Positions 20,437-31,116 of a stretch of 64,000 nt of DNA are shown in pieces (the stretch's first letter is position 1; the number at the start of each line of letters is the position of its first letter). The stretch comes from Rebecca billardiae RCC1528 (lineage: Eukaryota; Protista; Haptophyta). Location: NCBI GenBank assembly GCA_965240325.2, contig OZ251246.1, positions 620,001 to 684,000 on the forward strand. The letters are read 5' to 3'. Made by a program: the position numbers and the translations under genes. The notes beneath the pieces are model-generated. The model searched no databases, had not been told where the DNA came from, and worked only from the letters and a program-made list of their open reading frames with translations.

Positions 20437-21114
20437 GATTATTATAATGTTGCGCAACCTTCCGCATTCCGTCTCAAGTACAGTTTATTTGTTTTAACGT
20501 GCGTAAGGCTCACGGTGGCAGGTTGCCGCGCCATCCTTCATCGCACGCTCTCCGAAGAGAGACCTGGAAACTGACAGTAGCCTACTCTGTCCCTGATCAA
20601 GACCGTGGATCTACAAGCAGTACAGCAAGGGCCCTTGAGTACAGTGCGTCTATACTTCGGATTGTAGTTGCCGATCGTACGCTGCCTCAGCCGAGTCTTC
20701 AGGCGAGTGTATCAGGGCGCCGCCGGGGTGCCGGTCGGACTCAGCCAACTAGCAGTGCTGAAGGAAAGAAATCGCGGTGCTGAGGATTTGCTGTCGTTGC
20801 TGTGGTCGTTCTGAATAATAACATGCTGCTGTTCATGGTCACGTACACCACACTGGAAATATATGCTGATGAGGCTTATGACGATGGAAGTGAAGTCGCC
20901 GAGCCTGCACGAGTCGTCAAGCCCGTGTGTCGCATGCGGTTGCGAGCCCCTGTCATCGCTGTCCGTGCAGGAGCCCGTCTGGTCCTAGTCCTACAATCTC
21001 GCATCAACACGGCCGCAGTAGCAGATGATGATGAGATGCCTGCCGTGATGATACACACGCGGCGATGCGCCACTGCATGTCCTCGATCAAATGAAGCAGA
21101 GTGCGACGCGCGCT

Positions 21115-24100
21115 CTACTTCTCGGCGACGTCCGTGTCCGAATCGTCGCTGGCCGCGCCCATCGCCTCGATCTCGCCCGGCGAGATGCCAAACTTGAGGA
21201 TGTGGATCTCCTCGCCGGTGAGCCCGGTCTTCTTGAGCGAGGAGAAGTCGACCTCGCCCAGCCGCGAGAAGGTGACGGACACCGACTCCTGCATCGCCAC
21301 GAGGTCGGCGGTCTGCGGGCCCAGAGGTGGGTGGGGAGGCGTTCGCGCGGGCGGTCGCGTGTCAGCGCGCGGGCGCGGGCGCGACTCGGCGGCTCGCGCG
21401 CGCCCGCGACCTCGCGCGACGGGCGCGCACCCTGCCGCGCAGCTCCGCGAGCGGGATGATGTCGAGGTCGTCCGCTGATCTCGCCGTCGTGTCGAGGTCC
21501 ACGCCGATCTTGCTCCGGAAGTACTCCACGCGCAGCGGGTTGCGCGCCGCGTACTTCTTGACCTCGACCCAAAAGTGCGCCTGGCTCGCCTTGACCGCGT
21601 CGGCGCCCTCGTCCGTCTCGAGGCGCGTCACCTCCTCGACCCGCTTCTTGAACTTGTACGCGACCTTGCGCTGCTCGCGCACCCACTTGGACAGCACGAC
21701 GGCGATGCCGCACAGCTCCTCGCGCTGCTGGACCGTCGCCATGTCCGCCGCGCGCTTCTTGGCCGCGTGCTCGGACAGGTTGCGGATCAGCCGCTCGTGC
21801 GAGCCGTTCTTGGCGCCGCGCAGGTTGAGCAGCATGCGCGTGAGCTGCACCTCGTTCGACTCCTCGCGCTCCGTGTCGTCGAGCGAGGTGTTGCCGTAGA
21901 AGTCCTCGACGTTCGGGTCGATGCCCTCGCAGTCGAGCAGGAAGTGGCACGCGCCCACGTGCCCGTTCGCCGATGCGAGGTGCAGCGCCGTCCGGCCCTG
22001 GTGGTCCTGGATGTTGACGTTGCACCGGTACTTGACGAGCCGCTCGAGCTGCGCCACGTTGCCCTCCGCGCCCGCCGTGCACATGTACGCGGCGCTGTCG
22101 AACGTGGCGCCGAGGTTGGCGTCGCGCGCGAGCAGCAGGTCGCACACGTCCTCGTGCTTGGCGTGCACCGCGTCCTGCAGCGGCGTCACGCCGTACCGGT
22201 CGACCGCGTTGATGTCGGCCTTGAGCTCGAGCAGCAGCTTGACGTTCTCGATGATCCCCTCCGCCGCGGCCACGTGCAGCGGCGTGCGCTTGTTCGCGTC
22301 GCGGCAGGTCACCTCGCCCACCGTGTCGTACCGCAGGATGTAGCGCAGCGTCTCGAGCCCCTCCGGCTTGCCCGCGGCCGCGCACAGCTTCTCGACCGGG
22401 TCCTTCATCAGGCGCTTCGCGCCCGCGGCCTCGAGCATCTTGGCCGCCTCCATGTGCTTCTCGCGCAGCGCCTCCTCGAGCGGCGTGCCGCCGTACCGGT
22501 CGGCCACGTTCACGTCCGCGCGGTGGCCGAGCAGGAACTGGACCACGCCGAGGTGGCCGAAGCACGCGGCGAGGTGCAGCGGGCGGCGGCCGTTGACGTT
22601 GGCGTGGTTGACGCTCACGCCGCTCGCCGAGATGATGCGCCGCGCCTTATCGCGCTCGCCGTTCGCGCACGCCGCGCACAGCTTGGTGAGCATCAAGTCC
22701 TCGCGCTTGCGCTTGATGTCCTTGATCATCATGCGCACGTTGTCGAGGTGCGAGGAGACGTCGGAGGACGAGTCGGCGAGCGAGTTGCTCATCGTCGTCG
22801 ACGACTTAGTCGTCGACGACTTGGCCGCGGAGTACTTGCTCGAGTGCGCGGACGTCTTCGAGCGGCCCGAGCGAGCCGTCATCGCGCCTGCATCCCGCGC
22901 GGCACCCGGCGCGGCGCGGCGCGCGCATGTGAGCGCGCATGCGCGCGCGCTCGCGCTGTCGCGGCGCGTCCGACGGCCGGCTCGCGGTGACGGGCGTGGC
23001 GAGGGCCGCGGAGCGTGTGCTCGCGCGGCGTGCGTGCGGGCGGGCGCGCACCGTCATACTGGCGGATCGCGTTGTCCATGATGTTGTCCTCGTCATCGGG
23101 GAAGGCCTTGAGCAGCTCGACATAGTCCACGCGCTGCACAATGATCACCTTGGACTCCATGCCGGCCGCGGCGCGCGCGTTCTGGAAATGGCGGATGCCG
23201 AAGACGAAGGGCACCTCGCCGAGCGTGTCGCCAGGGCCGGCGTTGCCCGCGGGCTCGGGCTCGGCGTCCGCCACCTCGGCCTCGTTCGTGATGTCGAGCG
23301 AGCCCGTCCACACGATGCAGAGCTCCTTGCAGGCCTCGCCCGCGCGGAAGAGGAACGCCTCCTCCTCGAGGATCCGCTCGCGGAGCACGGCGGCGAGGCG
23401 GTTGAGGAAGCCGTTCGAGGTGTTCTCGAGCAGCGACGCCTGGCCCACGATCGCGCGGTACATGTACACCGACACGTCGATCTGCAGCGCCACCGGCATC
23501 GCGGCGAACATGTCCTCCGCCTTGACGGACGAGCCGGACGACTCGGTGACGTGCGCGCGGAAGAAGGACTCGATGTCCTCCTTGAGCTTGGTCGAGATGA
23601 TCGCGTGCTTGAGGAACTCCTGCACCGTCTCGATCTGCGCGCGCTTACCCACCAGCTCCGCGTCCTGGTTCATCACCAGCGTGGAGATCTGGCCGACGCA
23701 CCACGCGTCTGCGGCGCGCGCGCGGCGCGGGCGGCGCGCGGGCACCGGGCGTGCGTGAGCGTGAGCGCGCGGCGCGCGGCGCGCGGCGCGCGGCGTGCGC
23801 GCGCGGCGCGGCGCGGCCGGCACGCACAGATGGTGAGGTTGAGCAGCATGAGGATCAAGAAGAGCGCGATCTCGGCGAAGTTGACCGGCACCTGCGTCAG
23901 CCCGAGCGTGGTGATCATGCTCATCACGAAGTAGAGGTTGATCAGGTAGCGCGTGAAGAGCGCCTGCTCGGCCGGCACGGTGACAAAGTCGAGGTGCTTG
24001 CCGATGGCCGCGGCGTCCTCGGTGTACGCGTCGAGCCACGTGCGCTCGCTGAACGAGTGCTCGGAGATGAGGTTCCAGAAGCACGCCATGTAGTGCGAGG

Positions 24101-26620
24101 CGAGCAGCAGCACCGAGATGTAGTGCCACAGCCAGCTCGACATGTCGTCGTCGCCGAGCGACGCGAGCCACGCCTTGTGCACGCGCCACGCGTGGCGCAG
24201 GTTGATGAGGCGCATGAGGCGCAGGCCATACACGACCTCGTACGGCTCGTTGAAGAGCAGCGCGATCCCGTCCTGCGGCAGCGCCGCGATCAGGTCGGGC
24301 ATGCAGTCCGTCATCAGGTAGCGCGCGCGGATCATCTTGGGGTCGACGACGGTGACAGAGTTCTCGTTCACAAACGACGTGCAGAACTTCATCACGATGC
24401 GCAGCCAGTACAGCGCGTCGATCGCGCCGTTGAGCACGGGCATCCAGTGCAGCCGGCTCGTCTCCGAGAGGAAGCACAGCATGATGGGCACGAACATCGC
24501 GTCGTACGTCACGCACGCGATGAAGACGCGGTGGAAGTTGACGTAGAACTTGGACGTGTGGTCGAGCACGTACCACGGCTTGATCTCGACGCGGCCCTCG
24601 CCGCCGTTGGTCATCTCGCGCAGCCGCTGCTTGCGCTGCACGAGGTGGTTGCGCACGCGCTCGTACGGCGTGAGCTTCATGCCCTGCTCGGCCACGCCGA
24701 TGCTCGCGATGCGCAGCTTGTTGCCCTGCTCGCGCAGCTCCTCCGCGACGCGCATCCACGACACGTAGCCCTCCGACTCGGCCGTCATCGCCTGGCCAGC
24801 CCACTGGTCGACGCCCGTCTCGGCAGCCTGGGCGGCGGTGGCGGCGGCGTGCCCCGGCGGCGCGAGCTTGATCTCGAGGTTCTGCTCGCACCACTGCCGC
24901 AGGTGCTCCGCCGATTCCGGCCCCATCTTGCGCAGCGTGACCGTGTGCGACGCGAACGTCAGCAGCACCTCGGGGTCGGCGAGGTCCTGCGCCTGGAGGC
25001 GCGCCGTGTCGATGCGCTGGTCGATGAGGTCGGCGAGCGCGATGTACGCCGCCCACGACCTGAGCGCGGTGTCCAGGTCCTCGATCGACGCCGGCGCGTC
25101 CACCTCCTCCGACTTCTTGCCCGCAAGCTTGAGGACACCGGCGCCGGCGCCGTGCGAGTCGCGGCCCTTGGTCACGCCCAGCTTGAGCTTGAGCGGCGAC
25201 TCGACGGCCTGGGCGCCGCCGAGGTCGTCGCCGCCCTCCTGCTCCGACGCGCGCTCGCTGTCCTCCTCGCCCTCCTCCGCCGGCGCCTTCTCGTTCGCCT
25301 CCGTCTCGGCGCTCGCGAGGATCCAGCGCGAGACGCCGATCGCAAAGTGCGTGCGCGAGAACGACTTGGGCTGCTTCTTCGCCTTCTCGGGGTTCATGAG
25401 GGCGTCGGCGTCGTCGGGCACCTCCTCGGGCAGCATCGCCTTGTACACCTTCGAGCGCAGCGCCTCGACCTCGCCCGTCGCGTCGCGCAGCGCCCCGAGC
25501 AGCGCCTTGATCTCCGAGCCGCCCATCTCGCCCAGCTCGTACTGCACGATGCGCACGTCGCTCAGCTTGATCGCGTCGCGCCGGTTGCGGTCGAAGACGC
25601 GGAACATGCGGCTGATGACGTACGCGGCCTCGGCGGCGGAGCCCGGGGCATTCATGGCCTCGCCCAGCGCGTTGAGCAGCGCGTCGCCGCTCTGCTGGTT
25701 CTCCTCGCCCTCCGCGGCGCCGGCCGTCATCCCCGGCTGAATCTTCTGCCCACTGCGACGCCAGCGGCTGTTGCGCCCGCCTCCGACCGGCGAGTCGGGC
25801 GGCGTGTGCGGCGGCGTGCTGCCCGTGCCGCTCGTGCGCGCCTTGGAGTGGCGGCCGCGCGGCTGCGGCGAGTCGTCCGCCTCCTCCTCGCCGCCGGCGG
25901 CGGCGGCGGCGGCCTCGGCCGGCGTCATCGACACGCGCACCGTGCGCGCGTGCCGCGCCGCGAGCGTCTCCACAAACTTGCGCGAGCTGAAGATCGCGAC
26001 GTGGCCGACCTCAGAGAGGTAGAGCTTGCGCACCGGCCCGGCGAGCGAGGCGCGCCGCGCCGCCTCCATCGCCGACGCGCGCCGCGCCGACGACGACTTG
26101 GGGTTGCGCGTGCCGTCGATGACCACCGGCTTGCCGAGGCCCTCAGACACGACCTTGGATGGCGAGGTCAGCTGCTCGGCGTCGGCGTCGGCGTCGGCCG
26201 CGCTCGCGGGCGCGTCGGCGACGGCGGCCTCGACGGCGCTGGGCGGCGCGACGGCGCCGATCCCCGGGAACGCCGGCGGCGCGTCCGCCTCCGCCTCCAT
26301 CGTCGCCAGCATCGCCTGCTCCGCCTCGAACTCGTCCGGCTGCGGGGGCGCGACGTCGCCCAGCATCACCCGCATCTCCTGATAGATCTCGTCCGCCGCG
26401 CGGACCGACTCGGACTCGGAGAGGCCGTACGAGGCGAGCAGCTTCTTGACGGCCTCGTGCTCGGCGCGCCGGCGCGCGAGCTCGTCGCTCGTCGTCGCGC
26501 CCGCCAGCCCGACGTGCTCCTCGTACTCCGCCTTGATGCGCTGCAGCCCGGCCTCCGCCTTGGGCAGCCGCAGCACGAGCCGCACAAACTCCTTGGCCTG
26601 CGTCGTCTCCTCCGTCTCGC

Positions 26621-26651
<31 letters not shown>

Positions 26652-29600
26652 CTTGGCGTCGGCGTTGGCTGCGGCGGCTGCGGCGGCGGCCACCTTCGCC
26701 TCCGCCTTCGCCGCGGCGATGCTCGCGCTCTGGGCGCCCACGCCGCCCTCCTCCTCCTCCTCCTCCTCCTCGTCGTCCAGCTCGGCCTCCTCCTCGTCGT
26801 CCTCGAGGCCGTACGCGGTGATCCAGTGGTCGGTGTGCCGCAGGATGGCCTTGTACAGCGCGGCGTGCAGCTTCTGCAGCTTGTGCAGCTGCTCGTTCAG
26901 GTCGTTGAACGAGAGGCCGACCTCGCGCCGCTTGGCGTTCTTGGTCACCGTCAGCTGCCGCCGCTCCTCCTGCAGCGCGTGCAGCTTGTGGATCATCTCG
27001 TACATGGGCAGCACGAGGCACTGCTGGTAGAGGTCCTGCAGCACCTGGTCGTGCGCGCAGCTCTTGGGCAGCGTCGCGTCGTTGTGCTTGACCAGGATCG
27101 CCGCGGCCTCCAGGTTGGTCTTGAGCGCGTCGACGAGCGGCGTGTTGCCCCAGCGGTCGATCGCGTTCACGTTGGCCGCCTTGCCGACGAGGTAGTGCGT
27201 CGCGGCGAGCGAGCCCGAGGCGACGACGAGGTGGAGCGGCGTGCGCCCGTCGTAGTCGAGCGCCTCGAGCGACGCGCCCACCTCGACGAGGAACTGCAGG
27301 TTCTCCGCGTCGCCCTCGTTCGCCGCCTTGCGCATCTTCTTCGCCATCCGCTCCGGGTCGGGGATCGCCATGTTGACCGCGAGCAGCTGCGTCACGATGC
27401 GCTGCTCGTTGGCGATCGCGTCGTCGATGGCGGTCATGCCCCAGCGGTCGACCGCGTTCACATCGGCGAGCTTGGTGAGCAGGTAGTCGACGACGCGCAC
27501 GTTGCCGATCGCCGACGCGAGGTGGAGCGCCGTCACGCCGTCGTGGTTCGCCACGTTGATCGCGACGCCCTGCGAGACGAGCAGCGTCATGTAGTTGAGG
27601 TCGCCCGAGATCGCGGCCTCGTGCATGCGCGCCGCCGCCTCCGCGAGCTCCAGGATGCCGCCAAAGCGCTGCAGCTCCTCGGCGACGGCGGTGTGCCGGC
27701 CGGTGACCGCGTCGGCGATGGGCGTGGCCTCCCAGCGGTCGCGCGCGTCGATCTGCGCGCCGAGCGAGCACAGCGTCGCCACGACCGCCGTGTGGCCCGA
27801 CGACGCGGCGAGGTGGAGCGTGGTGCGGCCGTCAAAGTCGCCCGTGTTGATGTCGAAGCCGCGCGCGACGAGCGAGCGCACGGTCTCGACGTCGCCGGTG
27901 ACCGCGGCCGTGAACATCTGCTGCAACGCGTTCACCTTGCGCTCGAGGATCGCGAGCCGGATCACCGCCTTGATCTCGGCCAGCTCCTTCGCCTCGTCCT
28001 CGTCGAGCTCGCCCGTCGACTCCATGTTGAGCTCCTCGCCGCTCTTGCTCAGGCCGAACTTGCGCAGCACGTTGCGCACGATCAGGTCGGACTGCTCGGG
28101 GTACGTCTTGATGATCTCCTCGTACGAGTCGTGCGAGAAGACGAGCAGCTTCACGTCCGAATCGGGCGTCGCGCGCACCGTGTACGGCTGCGGTACGCCG
28201 AGGAAGAAGGCGGTCTCGCCGACGAGCTGCCCCTCGCCCAGGTCGGAGCGGATCGTCGTGATGTGCACGTCGCCCTTCATCACGTTGAGCGCGCCGAGCA
28301 CGCACCAGAGCAGCTCGTGCGAGCCGTCGCCGCGGAGGAGCACCTGCTCGCGCGGCATCACGAACCGCTCGGTGACCTCGAGCGCGATGGCGCCGAGGAG
28401 CTGCTCCGTCGTGCCGAAGAAGCACCACGACGCCTTGCAGTGGCCCATGTACTGCTCCGACGCGTAGCGGAAGCGGAGCGCGTGCGGCATCATGCCGATG
28501 ACGCGGAGCGCGCCCGTCGCGGCCTTCTTCTGGCGGTACTCGAAGTAGTCGCGCATCAGCTCGGCGAGCTCCTCGGGCAGCTTCTTCGTCTCGATGAACG
28601 TGTCGAGCGTCTTGATCAGCGCCTTGAAGTGCACGACGTTCTCGTCGGTGCGCACGAGGTAGTGAAAGAGCGTACCGAGCACGAAGGCGTAGAAAATGAT
28701 CTGGATGACGGCGATCAGGCAGGCCATGACGACCTCGTACTCGTTCGCGATCATCACGCCCGCGTAGCCCATCGCGGTGACGCCGCCCCACGCCATGAAC
28801 GACGACATCAGGTAGCGCTCGATGCCCTCGGTCAGGCCGGGCGTGAACTCCTCGGTGCGCGCCATCGCGTGCAGCTGCGCCGGCCACGAGGGCAGCTCGA
28901 GCGGGCCGTGGTCGTGCTGCTCCTGCTCGGCGATGAACCACCAGACGCAGCCGACCCAGTGCGGCACGGAGACGAGCACGAGCGAGAACTTGAACACGCT
29001 CAGGAACGTCACGTTGGTCGAGAGGTCCTGGTTGATGTCCTCCATCGCGATCGTGAGGTCGTACACGCGCAGCAGGCGCACGAGCTGGATGAGGAGGAAC
29101 GGGTCCACGCCGCCGCGCAGGAAGAAGAAGGCGCGTGCGGCGTACAGGCCGACGATCGAGAGCGCGTCGACGAGCACCCAGCGCGCCGTGTACCGCCAGT
29201 GCACGATCACGGCGTGGTTGTTGTTGTGGGCGGCGCGGCCGTCCTTGGTCTTGTAGTTCTCGCGCACCTCCGACCAGATCCAGACCATCTCGAAGATCTG
29301 CCACGCGGCGCGCGAAGCCGAGCCGACATGACGCGCAAGGCATGCACGCACGCGCGCGCGCACGCGGGGCCGTGAGCGGCTCGGCCGGCGGCGTGGGCGC
29401 GCGCGCGCGCGCGGCGCTCGCGTCGCTGCACTCGCGCTGCGCGCACGTCTGTGATCAGGTCGATGGCGATGAAGAAGGGGTCGGCGATGACCCACAGCGG
29501 GTAGGCGACGCGCACGGGGAGTGCCAGCTCCTCGTACATCAGCATCAGCAGATGGATCAGCTTGTAGAGCGACGACCACTTGTCGTACAACTCGCGCTCG

Positions 29601-29770
29601 ATCTCGCGGTTGAACTCGTCGGCTTCCTTGTCGTTCTGTGCGGTGAGCACCTGGCGCCAGCGGATGTGCTTATCCGCGCCGCGAGGCCGCTCGTGCGCGT
29701 GGAGGATGCCCTTCAGCGATGCCGGGCCATGGCGCGCTCCGAAGAGCACGGCTTTCAATGCTTCGAGCAT
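21115..29770 (-). CDS. Tandem two-module Shaker/CNBD/ankyrin cation channel (~2701 aa); exons 29770-29447, 29297-23828, 23708-23052, 22887-21431, 21312-21115
   Basis: Four GT-AG introns join in frame (8106 nt). Module 1: S4 LVRLLRV, pore TAMGYAG, CNBD GETAF..PQPYTVR, ankyrins (DFDGRTTLHLAA). Module 2: S4 LRLMRLINLR, pore TTLGLTQVP, CNBD LGEVPF, ankyrins (NGRRPLHLAA). Confidence 0.9.
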
Positions 29771-30062: not shown

Positions 30063-31116
30063 GAGGCCACTCGAGCGACTTCGTGTCTGGCGAGGCAGAT
30101 CGCGCCAGTGCGTGGCGAGGCAGACGCTCGCCTGCCTCGCCGCTTGGCGAGGCAGCTAAGCTAGTAACGCCGCGGCCGAACTTTACGAAAGCCAAATGTC
30201 TGCCGGTGCGCCGCCCGTCTTTTGCGCACGGTGACAAGGGCGCGCGAGGGCGCTTCCTCACGATCCCGAAGAGCGCTGCGCGCGGCGTCGCGTTGGCGGC
30301 GGCAGCGGCGCTGGGGTGTATCTTGCCCATTCTGCGTGGCGGCGCGCTCTCATGACGCCTCGGCCGCCGCCACGCCATGCGCGACCGGGCGTGTCGCCTT
30401 CTTGACGGGCAGTGCACACGCCCTTGCAAGCGCACAGCCGTGAAGAGCCGAGAGCGTCCGTCGCGAGCACGCCGCCCACGCGGGATGCGTTGCCAGGGCT
30501 ATTCGTATGACACTGGGTGCTCGCGCTCTGGCATGTGCGAGCCAGGATGACCATGGGTAGCAGCTACGATGAGCACTGCTAACCTGCATTTCAGCCGATG
30601 ACATCCTCTCGTTCAGCGATCTTGACTGCTCTGAACGCATGGCGAACTCGGCGAAGCGCATGCGCAAGGTGGCTTCGGTGACAGCATAACGCATCCCGCG
30701 TGGGCGGCGTGCTCGCGACGGACGCTCTCGGCTCTTCACGGCTGTGCGCTTGCAAGGGCGTGTGCACTGCCCGTCAAGAAGGCGACACGCCCGGTCGCGC
30801 ATGGCGTGGCGGCGGCCGAGGCGTCATGAGAGCGCGCCGCCACGCAGAATGGGCAAGATACACCCCAGCGCCGCTGCCGCCGCCAACGCGACGCCGCGCG
30901 CAGCGCTCTTCGGGATCGTGAGGAAGCGCCCTCGCGCGCCCTTGTCACCGTGCGCAAAAGACGGGCGGCGCACCGGCAGACATTTGGCTTTCGTAAAGTT
31001 CGGCCGCGGCTTTACTAGCTTAGCTGCCTCGCCAAGCGGCGAGGCAGGCGAGCGTCTGCCTCGCCACGCACTGGCGCGATCTGCCTCGCCAGACACGAAG
31101 TCGCTCGAGCGGCCTC
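30063..31116. repeat. Long near-perfect inverted repeat (429-bp arms, 196-bp spacer); possible foldback element
   Basis: 30063-30491 is the reverse complement of 30688-31116 with ~2 mismatches seen; CGTCC directly flanks both ends. Confidence 0.95.

What the first reader, a model, noticed from the sequence alone, without database searches (positions are those of the whole stretch)
23880..28790. The two pore loops are of different classes: K-type spacing (TAMGYAG) and CNG-type spacing (TTLGLTQVPV)
Seen: pore 1 reads GVTAMGYAGVMIANEYE and pore 2 reads MITTLGLTQVPVNFAE. Established: K-selective filters are TxGYGD (e.g. TTVGYGDLHPVN), while non-selective CNG channels have a two-residue-shorter TTIGETPPPV. 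Pore 1 keeps the K-channel register but has GYA instead of GYG; pore 2 has the CNG register but lacks the Glu. Inference: a dimer would form a 2+2 asymmetric filter that is probably not K-selective, possibly a new Ca/Na or non-selective channel type.
Basis: partly seen in the sequence, partly recalled or inferred. Interest (0 to 1): 0.8.

Follow-up and report, generated by a model that had tools for sequence, protein, structure and literature searches.

The report
Tandem two-pore CNBD-ankyrin channel gene
This alga encodes a giant protein made of two complete plant-Shaker-like channel subunits joined head to tail; their two pore loops differ from each other and from potassium channels in a way conserved across relatives, so it is probably a hybrid-pore cation channel that has never been tested.

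Summary
Pore 1 (GVTAMGYAGVMIANEYE) lies at 28734-28784 and pore 2 (MITTLGLTQVPVNFAE) at 23871-23918, both on the minus strand.

They belong to one five-exon gene (29770-21115) encoding 2,701 aa: two complete modules, each 6TM, then a CNBD-like domain, then ankyrin repeats. The modules are joined by a linker of about 800 aa.

This is a conserved family. Diacronema lutheri has at least seven paralogues, two MMETSP cDNAs carry uninterrupted 8-kb ORFs, and Rhodelphis marinus has three members. Unchecked first-stage notes list about ten more copies in this same genome, and this same stretch was also noted before.

- **Pore 1:** it keeps K-channel length and an invariant G-Y. Here it reads A-M-G-Y-A, so it lacks both the filter Thr and the last Gly.
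- **Pore 2:** it keeps only T-L-G. It is one residue (not two) shorter than AKT1 and aligns to CNGA1 without gaps. Its Y and G positions are the most variable columns, flanked by invariant Pro and Glu.

The pores are therefore under constraint, not decaying. The CNG likeness is convergence: the whole module is closest to KCNH and AKT channels. Both CNBDs lack the phosphate-binding Arg.

Non-K-selective cation conduction through a 2+2 pore is a reasonable inference, but it is untested. [quoted passage not shown]

The parts
21115..29770 (-). Whole gene: five exons at 29770-29447, 29297-23828, 23708-23052, 22887-21431 and 21312-21115 (TAG stop); encodes 2,701 aa
   Evidence: the spliced CDS is 8,106 nt, in frame, with one terminal stop. 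All introns run GTGCG[CT]GC...CAG. Junctions 1-3 are colinear with cDNA-derived homologues.
28650..29590 (-). Module 1 transmembrane domain, S1-S6 (aa ~63-316). S1 lies in exon 1 and the rest in exon 2.
   Evidence: PDB phmmer hits AKT5, hERG, KAT3 and SKOR at E 1e-14 to 1e-17. AF2 model has pLDDT 88.
29058..29099 (-). Module 1 S4 (FLLIQLVRLLRVYD): only two Arg, with Asp at the position of the third Arg of AKT5
   Evidence: Alignment to AKT5; family alignment.
28734..28784 (-). Pore loop 1, GVTAMGYAGVMIANEYE. The filter equivalent is A-M-G-Y-A, against T-V-G-Y-G in K channels.
   Evidence: G-Y is invariant in haptophyte-type relatives; the third position is G, A, S or E.
28101..28358 (-). CNBD-like domain 1. 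Its phosphate-binding cassette reads GETAFFLGVPQPYTVRA (28170-28220), with Gln where the Arg belongs, as in plant Shaker channels.
   Evidence: Pfam cNMP_binding scores 26.3 bits, just under the 27.5 cut-off. The alignment to AKT5 runs through the domain. The AF2 beta-roll has pLDDT 96-98.
27030..27920 (-). Ankyrin repeat block 1
   Evidence: Pfam Ank_2 at 4e-34.
24582..27029 (-). Inter-module linker of about 800 aa, partly low-complexity. It contains a conserved EF-hand-like element at 25557-25607.
   Evidence: Continuous ORF. Residues 1330-1382 are 45% identical to P0001. Weak EF-hand_7 hits at E 0.03-0.08 appear in three homologues.
23829..24581 (-). Module 2 transmembrane domain, S1 to mid-S6 (aa 1681-1931). 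S6 is completed in exon 3.
   Evidence: PDB hits KCNH5 at 2.7e-15 and AKT1 at 9e-11. AF2 pLDDT is 92.8 and pTM 0.86. Foldseek finds hERG, HCN1, AKT1, EAG and CNG at TM 0.65-0.76.
24174..24227 (-). Module 2 S4 (GLRLMRLINLRHAWRVHK), with about five basic residues
   Evidence: Alignment to KCNH5; family consensus LRLxRxINxRYAxRxYR.
23871..23918 (-). Pore loop 2, MITTLGLTQVPVNFAE. The filter equivalent is T-L-G-L-T.
   Evidence: T, G, P, N and E are conserved; the two positions after G are the most variable.
23709..23827 (-). Intron 2, which splits S6 of module 2 (phase 1)
   Evidence: The joined sequence LNLTI-Y-AWCVGQIS matches LNMSAYAWCVGGIS in cDNA-derived P0001.
23107..23373 (-). CNBD-like domain 2. 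Its cassette reads GEVPFVFGIRHFQNARA, with His aligned to the Arg of LliK.
   Evidence: Pfam cNMP_binding at 29.8 bits; alignment to 5v4s.
21908..22618 (-). Ankyrin repeat block 2
   Evidence: Pfam Ank_2 at 1.7e-38.

Best explanation
The stretch lies inside an intact 2,701-aa gene for a covalent tandem of two complete CNBD-clade channel subunits. Each module is 6TM, then a C-linker and CNBD-like domain, then ankyrin repeats, which is the plant AKT/SKOR layout, here duplicated in one chain. By analogy with TPC and K2P channels, two chains most likely assemble so that two copies of pore loop 1 alternate with two of pore loop 2 around one pore (inferred). Pore loop 1 has K-channel length and keeps G-Y, but it has lost the site-4 Thr and the last Gly (A-M-G-Y-A). 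Pore loop 2 keeps only the inner T-L-G and then follows a shorter, CNG-length path to a conserved Pro. A complete four-site carbonyl cage therefore cannot form. The predicted result is a weakly selective or non-selective cation pore, closer to NaK, CNG or HCN than to a K channel (inferred). Gating is more likely driven by voltage through the charge-rich S4 of module 2, because the S4 of module 1 has only two Arg. It is less likely driven by cyclic nucleotides, because both CNBDs lack the phosphate-binding Arg, as in plant Shaker CNBHDs (inferred from sequence).
For: Gene model and single chain: a clean five-exon CDS is colinear with two uninterrupted cDNA ORFs of 2,647 and 2,704 aa. Domain order comes from Pfam and PDB sequence matches. 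The folds are confident and match CNBD-clade structures. The asymmetry is conserved: ten haptophyte-type full-length members all have G-Y-[GAES] in pore 1 and a short non-GYG pore 2. In 21-22 module-2 representatives, T is 17/21, G 19/22, P 21/21, N 15/21 and E 21/21, while the Y and G positions have entropy of about 2.9 bits. None of the 22 representatives scoring at least 150 bits has G[YF]G, against 161 of 191 other repeats. All module 1 sequences form one clade at 100/99, and the module 2 sequences are split from everything else at 100/99, with Rhodelphis inside both groups. The tandem and its division of labour are therefore old. Register: AKT1 needs one gap and CNGA1 none. The selectivity rule is that two or three sites, or loss of the site-4 Thr, give non-selective pores, and that the TVG-x-TPP filter of CNG mimics is non-selective even with a neutral x (PMC3082925).
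Against: There are no functional data for any member. Stoichiometry is not shown. P0010 carries a module-2-type channel alone behind PAS and RGS domains, so this pore type may also work without pore 1. Four relatives keep a canonical G-Y-G-[DN] in pore 1, and pore 1's third position varies, so selectivity may differ among paralogues. Monomer AF2 models say nothing about filter geometry in the assembled pore. No RNA run was listed for this locus, so expression here is unverified.
Confidence: 0.6

Rival explanations
1. It is still an essentially K+-selective channel. The two K-like pore 1 loops plus the T-L-G of pore 2 would suffice, much as K2P channels tolerate different P1 and P2 loops.
For: Pore 1 keeps K-channel length and G-Y, and paralogues have a full GYG[DN] there. 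The nearest solved relatives of both modules are K channels.
Against: Pore 2 lacks both Y and the second G and is one residue shorter. Pore 1 of this gene lacks the site-4 Thr and the last Gly. Filters with fewer than four sites, or without the Thr, lose selectivity (PMC3082925). K2P P2 loops still keep G-[FLY]-G (my recollection).
Confidence: 0.2
2. Four chains assemble into two separate pores, a module-1 tetramer and a module-2 tetramer, tethered by the long linkers. There would then be no 2+2 hybrid filter.
For: The linker plus CNBD and ankyrin block between the pores is about 1,350 aa, long enough to allow it. A module-2-type channel occurs alone in P0010. Each module has its own complete C-linker, CNBD and ankyrin set.
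Against: Known covalent multi-repeat channels (K2P, TPC, CNGK, Cav/Nav) build one pore from their repeats (established knowledge). Module 1 and module 2 trees are broadly congruent, which suggests co-evolution in one unit.
Confidence: 0.12
3. The pore no longer conducts, and the protein serves as a voltage or ligand sensor or an ankyrin scaffold (a pseudo-channel).
For: Both filters depart from every characterised selective motif. Filter positions vary greatly among paralogues.
Against: The pore helix, T-x-G, the invariant Pro and Glu, and the S6 motif N-x-T-x-Y-A-x-x-V-G are strongly conserved across representatives that share less than 50% identity. That pattern is expected for a working pore.
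Confidence: 0.06
4. It is a decaying duplicate or mis-joined gene: the pore variants are noise in a pseudogene, or two neighbouring genes were read as one.
For: No RNA run was listed for this locus.
Against: Exon 2 is a 5.4-kb uninterrupted ORF spanning both modules. Every splice site is consistent. Homologous cDNAs carry both modules in one ORF. The linker is conserved in part.
Confidence: 0.02

Closest known systems
[quoted passage not shown] 2020, PMC7576140)
   Same: Two 6TM-CNBD repeats sit in one polypeptide. First and second repeats form separate clades and co-diverge. S4-S5 linkers are short.
   Different: That survey reported no haptophyte tandems: its only haptophyte was Chrysochromulina, with no Pavlovales, and it does not mention ankyrin repeats. 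It states that filters follow the TVGY/FG consensus, with metazoan CNG as the only deviant clade. Here both repeats carry ankyrin blocks, proteins are about 2,500-2,900 aa, and pore 2 is never GYG. Environmental canonical tandems without ankyrin repeats fall outside both module clades.
Plant Shaker channels AKT1, AKT5, SKOR and GORK
   Same: The module order is 6TM, C-linker and CNBHD, then ankyrin repeats. CNBD1 has the plant-like cassette P-Q-x-[YF]-T-V-R without the Arg. These channels are among the best sequence and fold matches.
   Different: Plant channels are single subunits with a TxGYGD filter and a C-terminal KHA domain. Here two modules are fused, neither filter is canonical, and no KHA domain was found.
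Metazoan CNG channels (CNGA1-A4), filter T-I-G-E-T-P-P-P
   Same: Pore 2 has the same loop length and aligns without gaps. It shares T-[IL]-G-x-T...P-V...E. Some paralogues have an acidic residue in the loop (G-V-E-Q, G-M-E-S).
   Different: Leu replaces the Glu. Module 2 as a whole is far closer to KCNH and AKT than to CNG. The cyclic-nucleotide-contacting Arg is missing. The likeness is therefore convergent.
Two-pore channels (TPC1/2) and K2P channels
   Same: In both, two non-identical pore loops per chain are expected to dimerise into a pore with two-fold symmetry. In TPC1, only one of the two voltage sensors is charge-rich (my recollection).
   Different: These belong to different superfamily branches: no TPC or K2P chain appears among the PDB sequence hits. 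They have no CNBD or ankyrin domains.
CNGK (tetraKCNG), the four-repeat sperm K+-selective CNG channel
   Same: It is a covalent multi-repeat member of the CNBD clade.
   Different: It has four repeats, and it is K-selective and cGMP-gated (PMC4749565). Here there are two repeats with non-canonical filters and degenerate CNBDs.

Membership tests
CNBD-clade 6TM channels (KCNH / HCN / CNG / plant Shaker) | A 6TM voltage-sensor-plus-pore domain with a P-helix and re-entrant loop | tested here: met
   PDB phmmer E is 1e-17 for module 1 and 2.7e-15 for module 2. AF2 pLDDT is 88 and 92.8, with a P-helix followed by coil and S6. Foldseek hits hERG, HCN1, AKT1, EAG and CNG.
CNBD-clade 6TM channels (KCNH / HCN / CNG / plant Shaker) | A C-linker and cyclic-nucleotide-binding-fold domain directly after S6 | tested here: met
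   Pfam cNMP_binding scores 26.3 bits (just under the cut-off) and 29.8 bits. Alignments to AKT5, LliK and KAT1 run through the domain. The beta-roll is modelled at pLDDT 96-98.
CNBD-clade 6TM channels (KCNH / HCN / CNG / plant Shaker) | A short S4-S5 linker (non-domain-swapped architecture) | tested here: met
   In the module 2 model, the S4 helix (135-162) and S5 (168-195) are separated by five residues. This is a monomer model only.
K+-selective channels | The signature T-[VI]-G-[YF]-G in every pore loop | tested here: not met
   Pore 1 reads A-M-G-Y-A and pore 2 reads T-L-G-L-T.
Plant Shaker (AKT/SKOR type) | The order 6TM, CNBHD, ankyrin repeats | tested here: met
   Both modules have it.
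Plant Shaker (AKT/SKOR type) | One subunit per polypeptide, a GYGD filter and a C-terminal KHA domain | tested here: not met
   The chain is a tandem of two modules. The filters are non-canonical. No KHA domain appeared in Pfam scans of the C-terminus.
Metazoan CNG channels | Short pore loop of the T-I-G-E-T-P-P-P length | tested here: met
   A 40-residue ungapped alignment of pore 2 to CNGA1, against one gap to AKT1.
Metazoan CNG channels | An acidic residue after T-I-G | tested here: not met
   Leu is at that position. The site is highly variable in the family.
Metazoan CNG channels | A cyclic-nucleotide-competent phosphate-binding cassette (G-E...R-[ST]-A) | tested here: not met
   Gln is at the Arg position in CNBD1 (as in AKT5) and His in CNBD2.
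Metazoan CNG channels | Closest overall relatives are CNG subunits | tested here: not met
   CNGA4 scores 4e-4 and CNGA3 6e-3, against KCNH5 at 2.7e-15 and AKT1 at 9e-11.
Two-repeat tandem CNBD channels (PMC7576140) | Two 6TM-CNBD repeats in one ORF, supported by transcripts | tested here: met
   The continuous exon 2 spans both modules. Homologous cDNA contigs of 8.1 and 8.4 kb each carry one ORF.
Two-repeat tandem CNBD channels (PMC7576140) | Common descent with the dinoflagellate and oomycete tandem clades | tested here: inconclusive
   The published sequences were not in my set. Canonical environmental tandems without ankyrin repeats are separated from both module clades by starred branches.
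Two-pore channels (TPC) | Sequence membership in the TPC family | tested here: not met
   No TPC chain appears among PDB hits at E <= 0.01. This is an analogy of design only.

The most novel reading that the evidence does not exclude
These (6TM-CNBD-ankyrin)x2 proteins would be an uncharacterised class of pseudo-heterotetrameric channel. A K-like loop and a CNG-length loop alternate around the pore and give a selectivity not seen in either parent type, for example a Ca2+/Na+-permeable, voltage-gated conductance. The class is expanded in pavlovophyte algae and would be a CNBD-clade counterpart of TPCs.
Probability: 0.4. Interest if true: 0.75.

Novelty: new variant of a known kind. Interest (0 to 1): 0.58.

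Why it matters
If the hybrid pore conducts, it is a natural experiment in how many K-type filter strands a tetrameric pore needs. In this gene family, evolution has held one loop near the K-channel motif and let the other settle on a short T-x-G...P loop. The family could provide haptophytes and Rhodelphis with a Na+/Ca2+-permeable conductance built from plant-Shaker parts. It also extends covalent tandem CNBD channels beyond the SAR groups in which they were described. It offers compact targets for electrophysiology and cryo-EM.

Tried and rejected
- **RNA evidence:** The look-up of sequencing runs listed no run, so read laying was not used and expression at this locus is unverified.
- **Pore 1 alone against PDB:** the search gave no channel hit. 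The loop is only interpretable inside the whole-domain alignment.
- **Fold discrimination:** Foldseek cannot separate K, HCN and CNG relatives, which all score TM 0.65-0.76. Fold therefore does not classify the pore.
- **Model geometry:** model coordinates are not exposed to scripts, so filter backbone angles could not be measured.
- **Atlas search:** it was busy for new sequences. For the homologue P0005 it returned only generic Ion_trans and CNBD clusters.
- **Introns:** I considered that the four introns might be copies of one introner element. They share only the GTGCGCGC start and CG-rich low complexity.
- **Plant CNGC kinship of module 2:** rejected, because no plant CNGC structure is among the TM2 hits at E <= 0.01.
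- **Organism:** not identified. Its protein is not in the searched collections, and the best relatives are about 45% identical. It is therefore not the annotated D. lutheri assembly.


Full report
**The gene.** The finding lies on the minus strand, inside a very long ORF (23673-29579). Reading the junctions by eye and checking them by script gives a five-exon gene:
- exons at 29770-29447, 29297-23828, 23708-23052, 22887-21431 and 21312-21115;
- 8,106 coding bases, in frame, with one terminal stop, encoding 2,701 aa;
- every intron begins GTGCG[CT]GC and ends CAG.

The window is 58-79% G+C and clearly eukaryotic.

**Domain order.** Pfam and searches against solved structures give this order:
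- S1-S6 with pore 1;
- C-linker and CNBD-like domain 1;
- ankyrin repeats;
- a linker of about 800 aa;
- S1-S6 with pore 2;
- C-linker and CNBD-like domain 2;
- ankyrin repeats;
- a C-terminal tail.

The two halves are 24-26% identical to each other across the whole unit. An entire 6TM-CNBD-ankyrin subunit was therefore duplicated in tandem long ago.

**The observation.** The quoted peptides translate exactly from 28734-28784 (pore 1) and 23871-23918 (pore 2). Each sits between a predicted pore helix and S6 in a confidently folded domain. Module 2 has pLDDT 92.8 and pTM 0.86, and module 1 has pLDDT 88. The module 2 model matches hERG, HCN1, AKT1, EAG1, GORK, KAT1 and CNG structures about equally well, at TM 0.65-0.76.

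**The register claim.**
- Pore 1 aligns to AKT5 without a gap.
- Pore 2, searched alone, matches AKT1 best with a single one-residue gap (TTLGLTQV-PVN against TTVGYGDLHPVN). It then matches CNGA1 over 40 residues with no gap.
- In an HMM alignment of 298 repeats, canonical TVGYGD loops carry one extra residue before the conserved Pro.

The K-type against CNG-type spacing is therefore real, but the difference is one residue, not two. Its equivalent of T-V-G-Y-G is A-M-G-Y-A.

**Relatives.** A word-based search found five relatives at about 45% identity:
- D. lutheri KFE25_003141 (2,687 aa);
- D. lutheri KFE25_012280;
- two 2,647-aa and 2,704-aa proteins from JGI copies of transcriptome assemblies (one is also an MMETSP record), whose contigs are single uninterrupted ORFs;
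- one fragment.

A profile of module 2, run against 1.84 billion representatives, found 54 proteins below 1e-30. Cluster look-ups add D. lutheri KFE25_008060, _009088, _010589 and _000915, and three Rhodelphis marinus proteins of 2,487-2,739 aa with the same double architecture. No hit exceeds 50% identity, so the window's organism is not in those collections. Unchecked first-stage notes of this scan list about ten more tandem channels with asymmetric filters elsewhere in this same genome, and the same stretch was noted once before.

**Conservation.** In all ten haptophyte-type full-length members, pore 1 reads G-Y followed by G, A, S or E. G occurs in six, and GYA recurs in KFE25_010589. Pore 2 never has GYG. 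Across 21-22 module-2 representatives, each from a different 50%-identity cluster:
- the inner T is 17/21;
- G is 19/22;
- Pro is 21/21;
- Asn is 15/21;
- Glu is 21/21;
- the S6 motif N-x-T-x-Y-A-x-x-V-G is conserved;
- the two positions equivalent to Y and G of GYG are the most variable in the region, at about 2.9 bits.

None of the 22 representatives scoring at least 150 bits has G[YF]G, whereas 161 of 191 other repeats do. This is the pattern of a pore whose inner half is constrained and whose outer half has been freed. It is not decay.

**Phylogeny.** In a maximum-likelihood tree of 69 repeats:
- all module 1 sequences form one clade (100/99);
- the module 2 sequences, together with three proteins I had labelled single-module, are separated from everything else (100/99);
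- Rhodelphis and haptophyte members occur in both groups, and the two subtrees are broadly congruent;
- canonical (6TM-CNBD)x2 tandems from environmental data, which lack ankyrin repeats and carry TVGYGD in both repeats, cluster elsewhere with KCNH-like single channels.

The tandem, and the specialisation of its halves, therefore predates the paralogue radiation. It looks independent of those canonical tandems.

**How it probably works.** Shown:
- One chain carries two different pore loops.
- Both CNBDs lack the phosphate-binding Arg. CNBD1 reads P-Q-P-Y-T-V-R-A, like AKT5. CNBD2 has His aligned to the Arg of LliK.
- The S4 of module 1 has two Arg and an Asp at the third Arg position. The S4 of module 2 has about five basic residues.

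Inferred:
- Two chains form a pseudo-tetramer with alternating loops, as in TPC and K2P channels.
- Structural work on NaK and its mutants shows that filters with two or three sites, or without the site-4 Thr, are non-selective. It also shows that a T-V-G-x-T-P-P filter is non-selective whatever x is (PMC3082925).
- A pore with two A-M-G-Y-A strands and two T-L-G-L-T strands should therefore not be strictly K-selective.
- Voltage sensing would rest mainly on module 2.
- The CNBD folds would act as non-ligand-binding gating or regulatory rings, as in plant Shaker channels.

Caveats:
- No family member has been recorded electrophysiologically.
- P0010 has a module-2-type channel alone behind four PAS domains and an RGS domain, so this pore type may also assemble without pore 1.
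- A two-pore arrangement (a module-1 tetramer plus a module-2 tetramer) is not excluded.

**Comparison with what is known.** The only description of two-repeat tandem CNBD channels found in the held paper library is Pozdnyakov et al. 2020 (PMC7576140). It reports them in dinoflagellates and oomycetes. Its only haptophyte was Chrysochromulina, it does not mention ankyrin repeats, and it states that filter deviations are rare, with metazoan CNG as the only deviant clade. A search on Diacronema and Pavlovales channels returned only the EukCat papers. This family shares the tandem design. It differs in carrying ankyrin blocks in both repeats, in its size, in its taxa and in its conserved asymmetric filters. 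The CNG likeness of pore 2 is convergent: module 2 matches KCNH5 at 2.7e-15 and AKT1 at 9e-11, but CNG subunits only at 4e-4 to 6e-3.

**Verdict.** This is a real, intact, conserved gene for a hybrid-pore tandem channel. It is a new variant of a known kind, and its selectivity is an open and directly testable question.

Noticed in passing
window 30063-30491 and 30688-31116: A perfect 429-nt inverted repeat (100% complementary, 196-nt spacer) lies about 300 bp upstream of the channel gene's start codon. It might be a hairpin-forming element or a transposon remnant.
   Followed up: partly
window 25557-25607 (aa 1339-1355, inter-module linker): A conserved EF-hand-like element (MFRVFDRNRRDAIKLSD). 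It gives weak, sub-threshold Pfam EF-hand_7 hits at E 0.03-0.08 in the window protein and in two cDNA homologues. The loop residues are degenerate, so Ca2+ binding is doubtful.
   Followed up: partly
P0010 (JGI transcript-like contig, 2,567 aa): A relative in which a single module-2-type channel (pore STLGLAQLPSH) with CNBD and ankyrin repeats follows four PAS domains and an RGS domain. It may be a light- or redox- and G-protein-linked channel.
   Followed up: no
P0036, P0039, P0090 (Rhodelphis marinus): The same (6TM-CNBD-ankyrin)x2 architecture occurs outside haptophytes, but with the roles of the loops altered. Pore 1 there is short, with a Pro (N-L-G-N-L-G-I-Y-P), and one of the three (P0036) keeps G-Y in pore 2. 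Several distant module-2 relatives carry an acidic residue three positions before the Pro.
   Followed up: partly
window introns 29298-29446, 23709-23827, 22888-23051, 21313-21430: All four introns are 118-164 nt, extremely CG-rich, and start with the same octamer GTGCG[CT]GC. They are not copies of one element.
   Followed up: yes
window 21365-22882 and the opposite strand throughout 21000-29600: Because of the 70% G+C content, long spurious ORFs of up to 1,874 aa run antisense to the channel gene. They are Arg/Ala/Gly-rich and have no family matches, so they should not be taken for genes.
   Followed up: no
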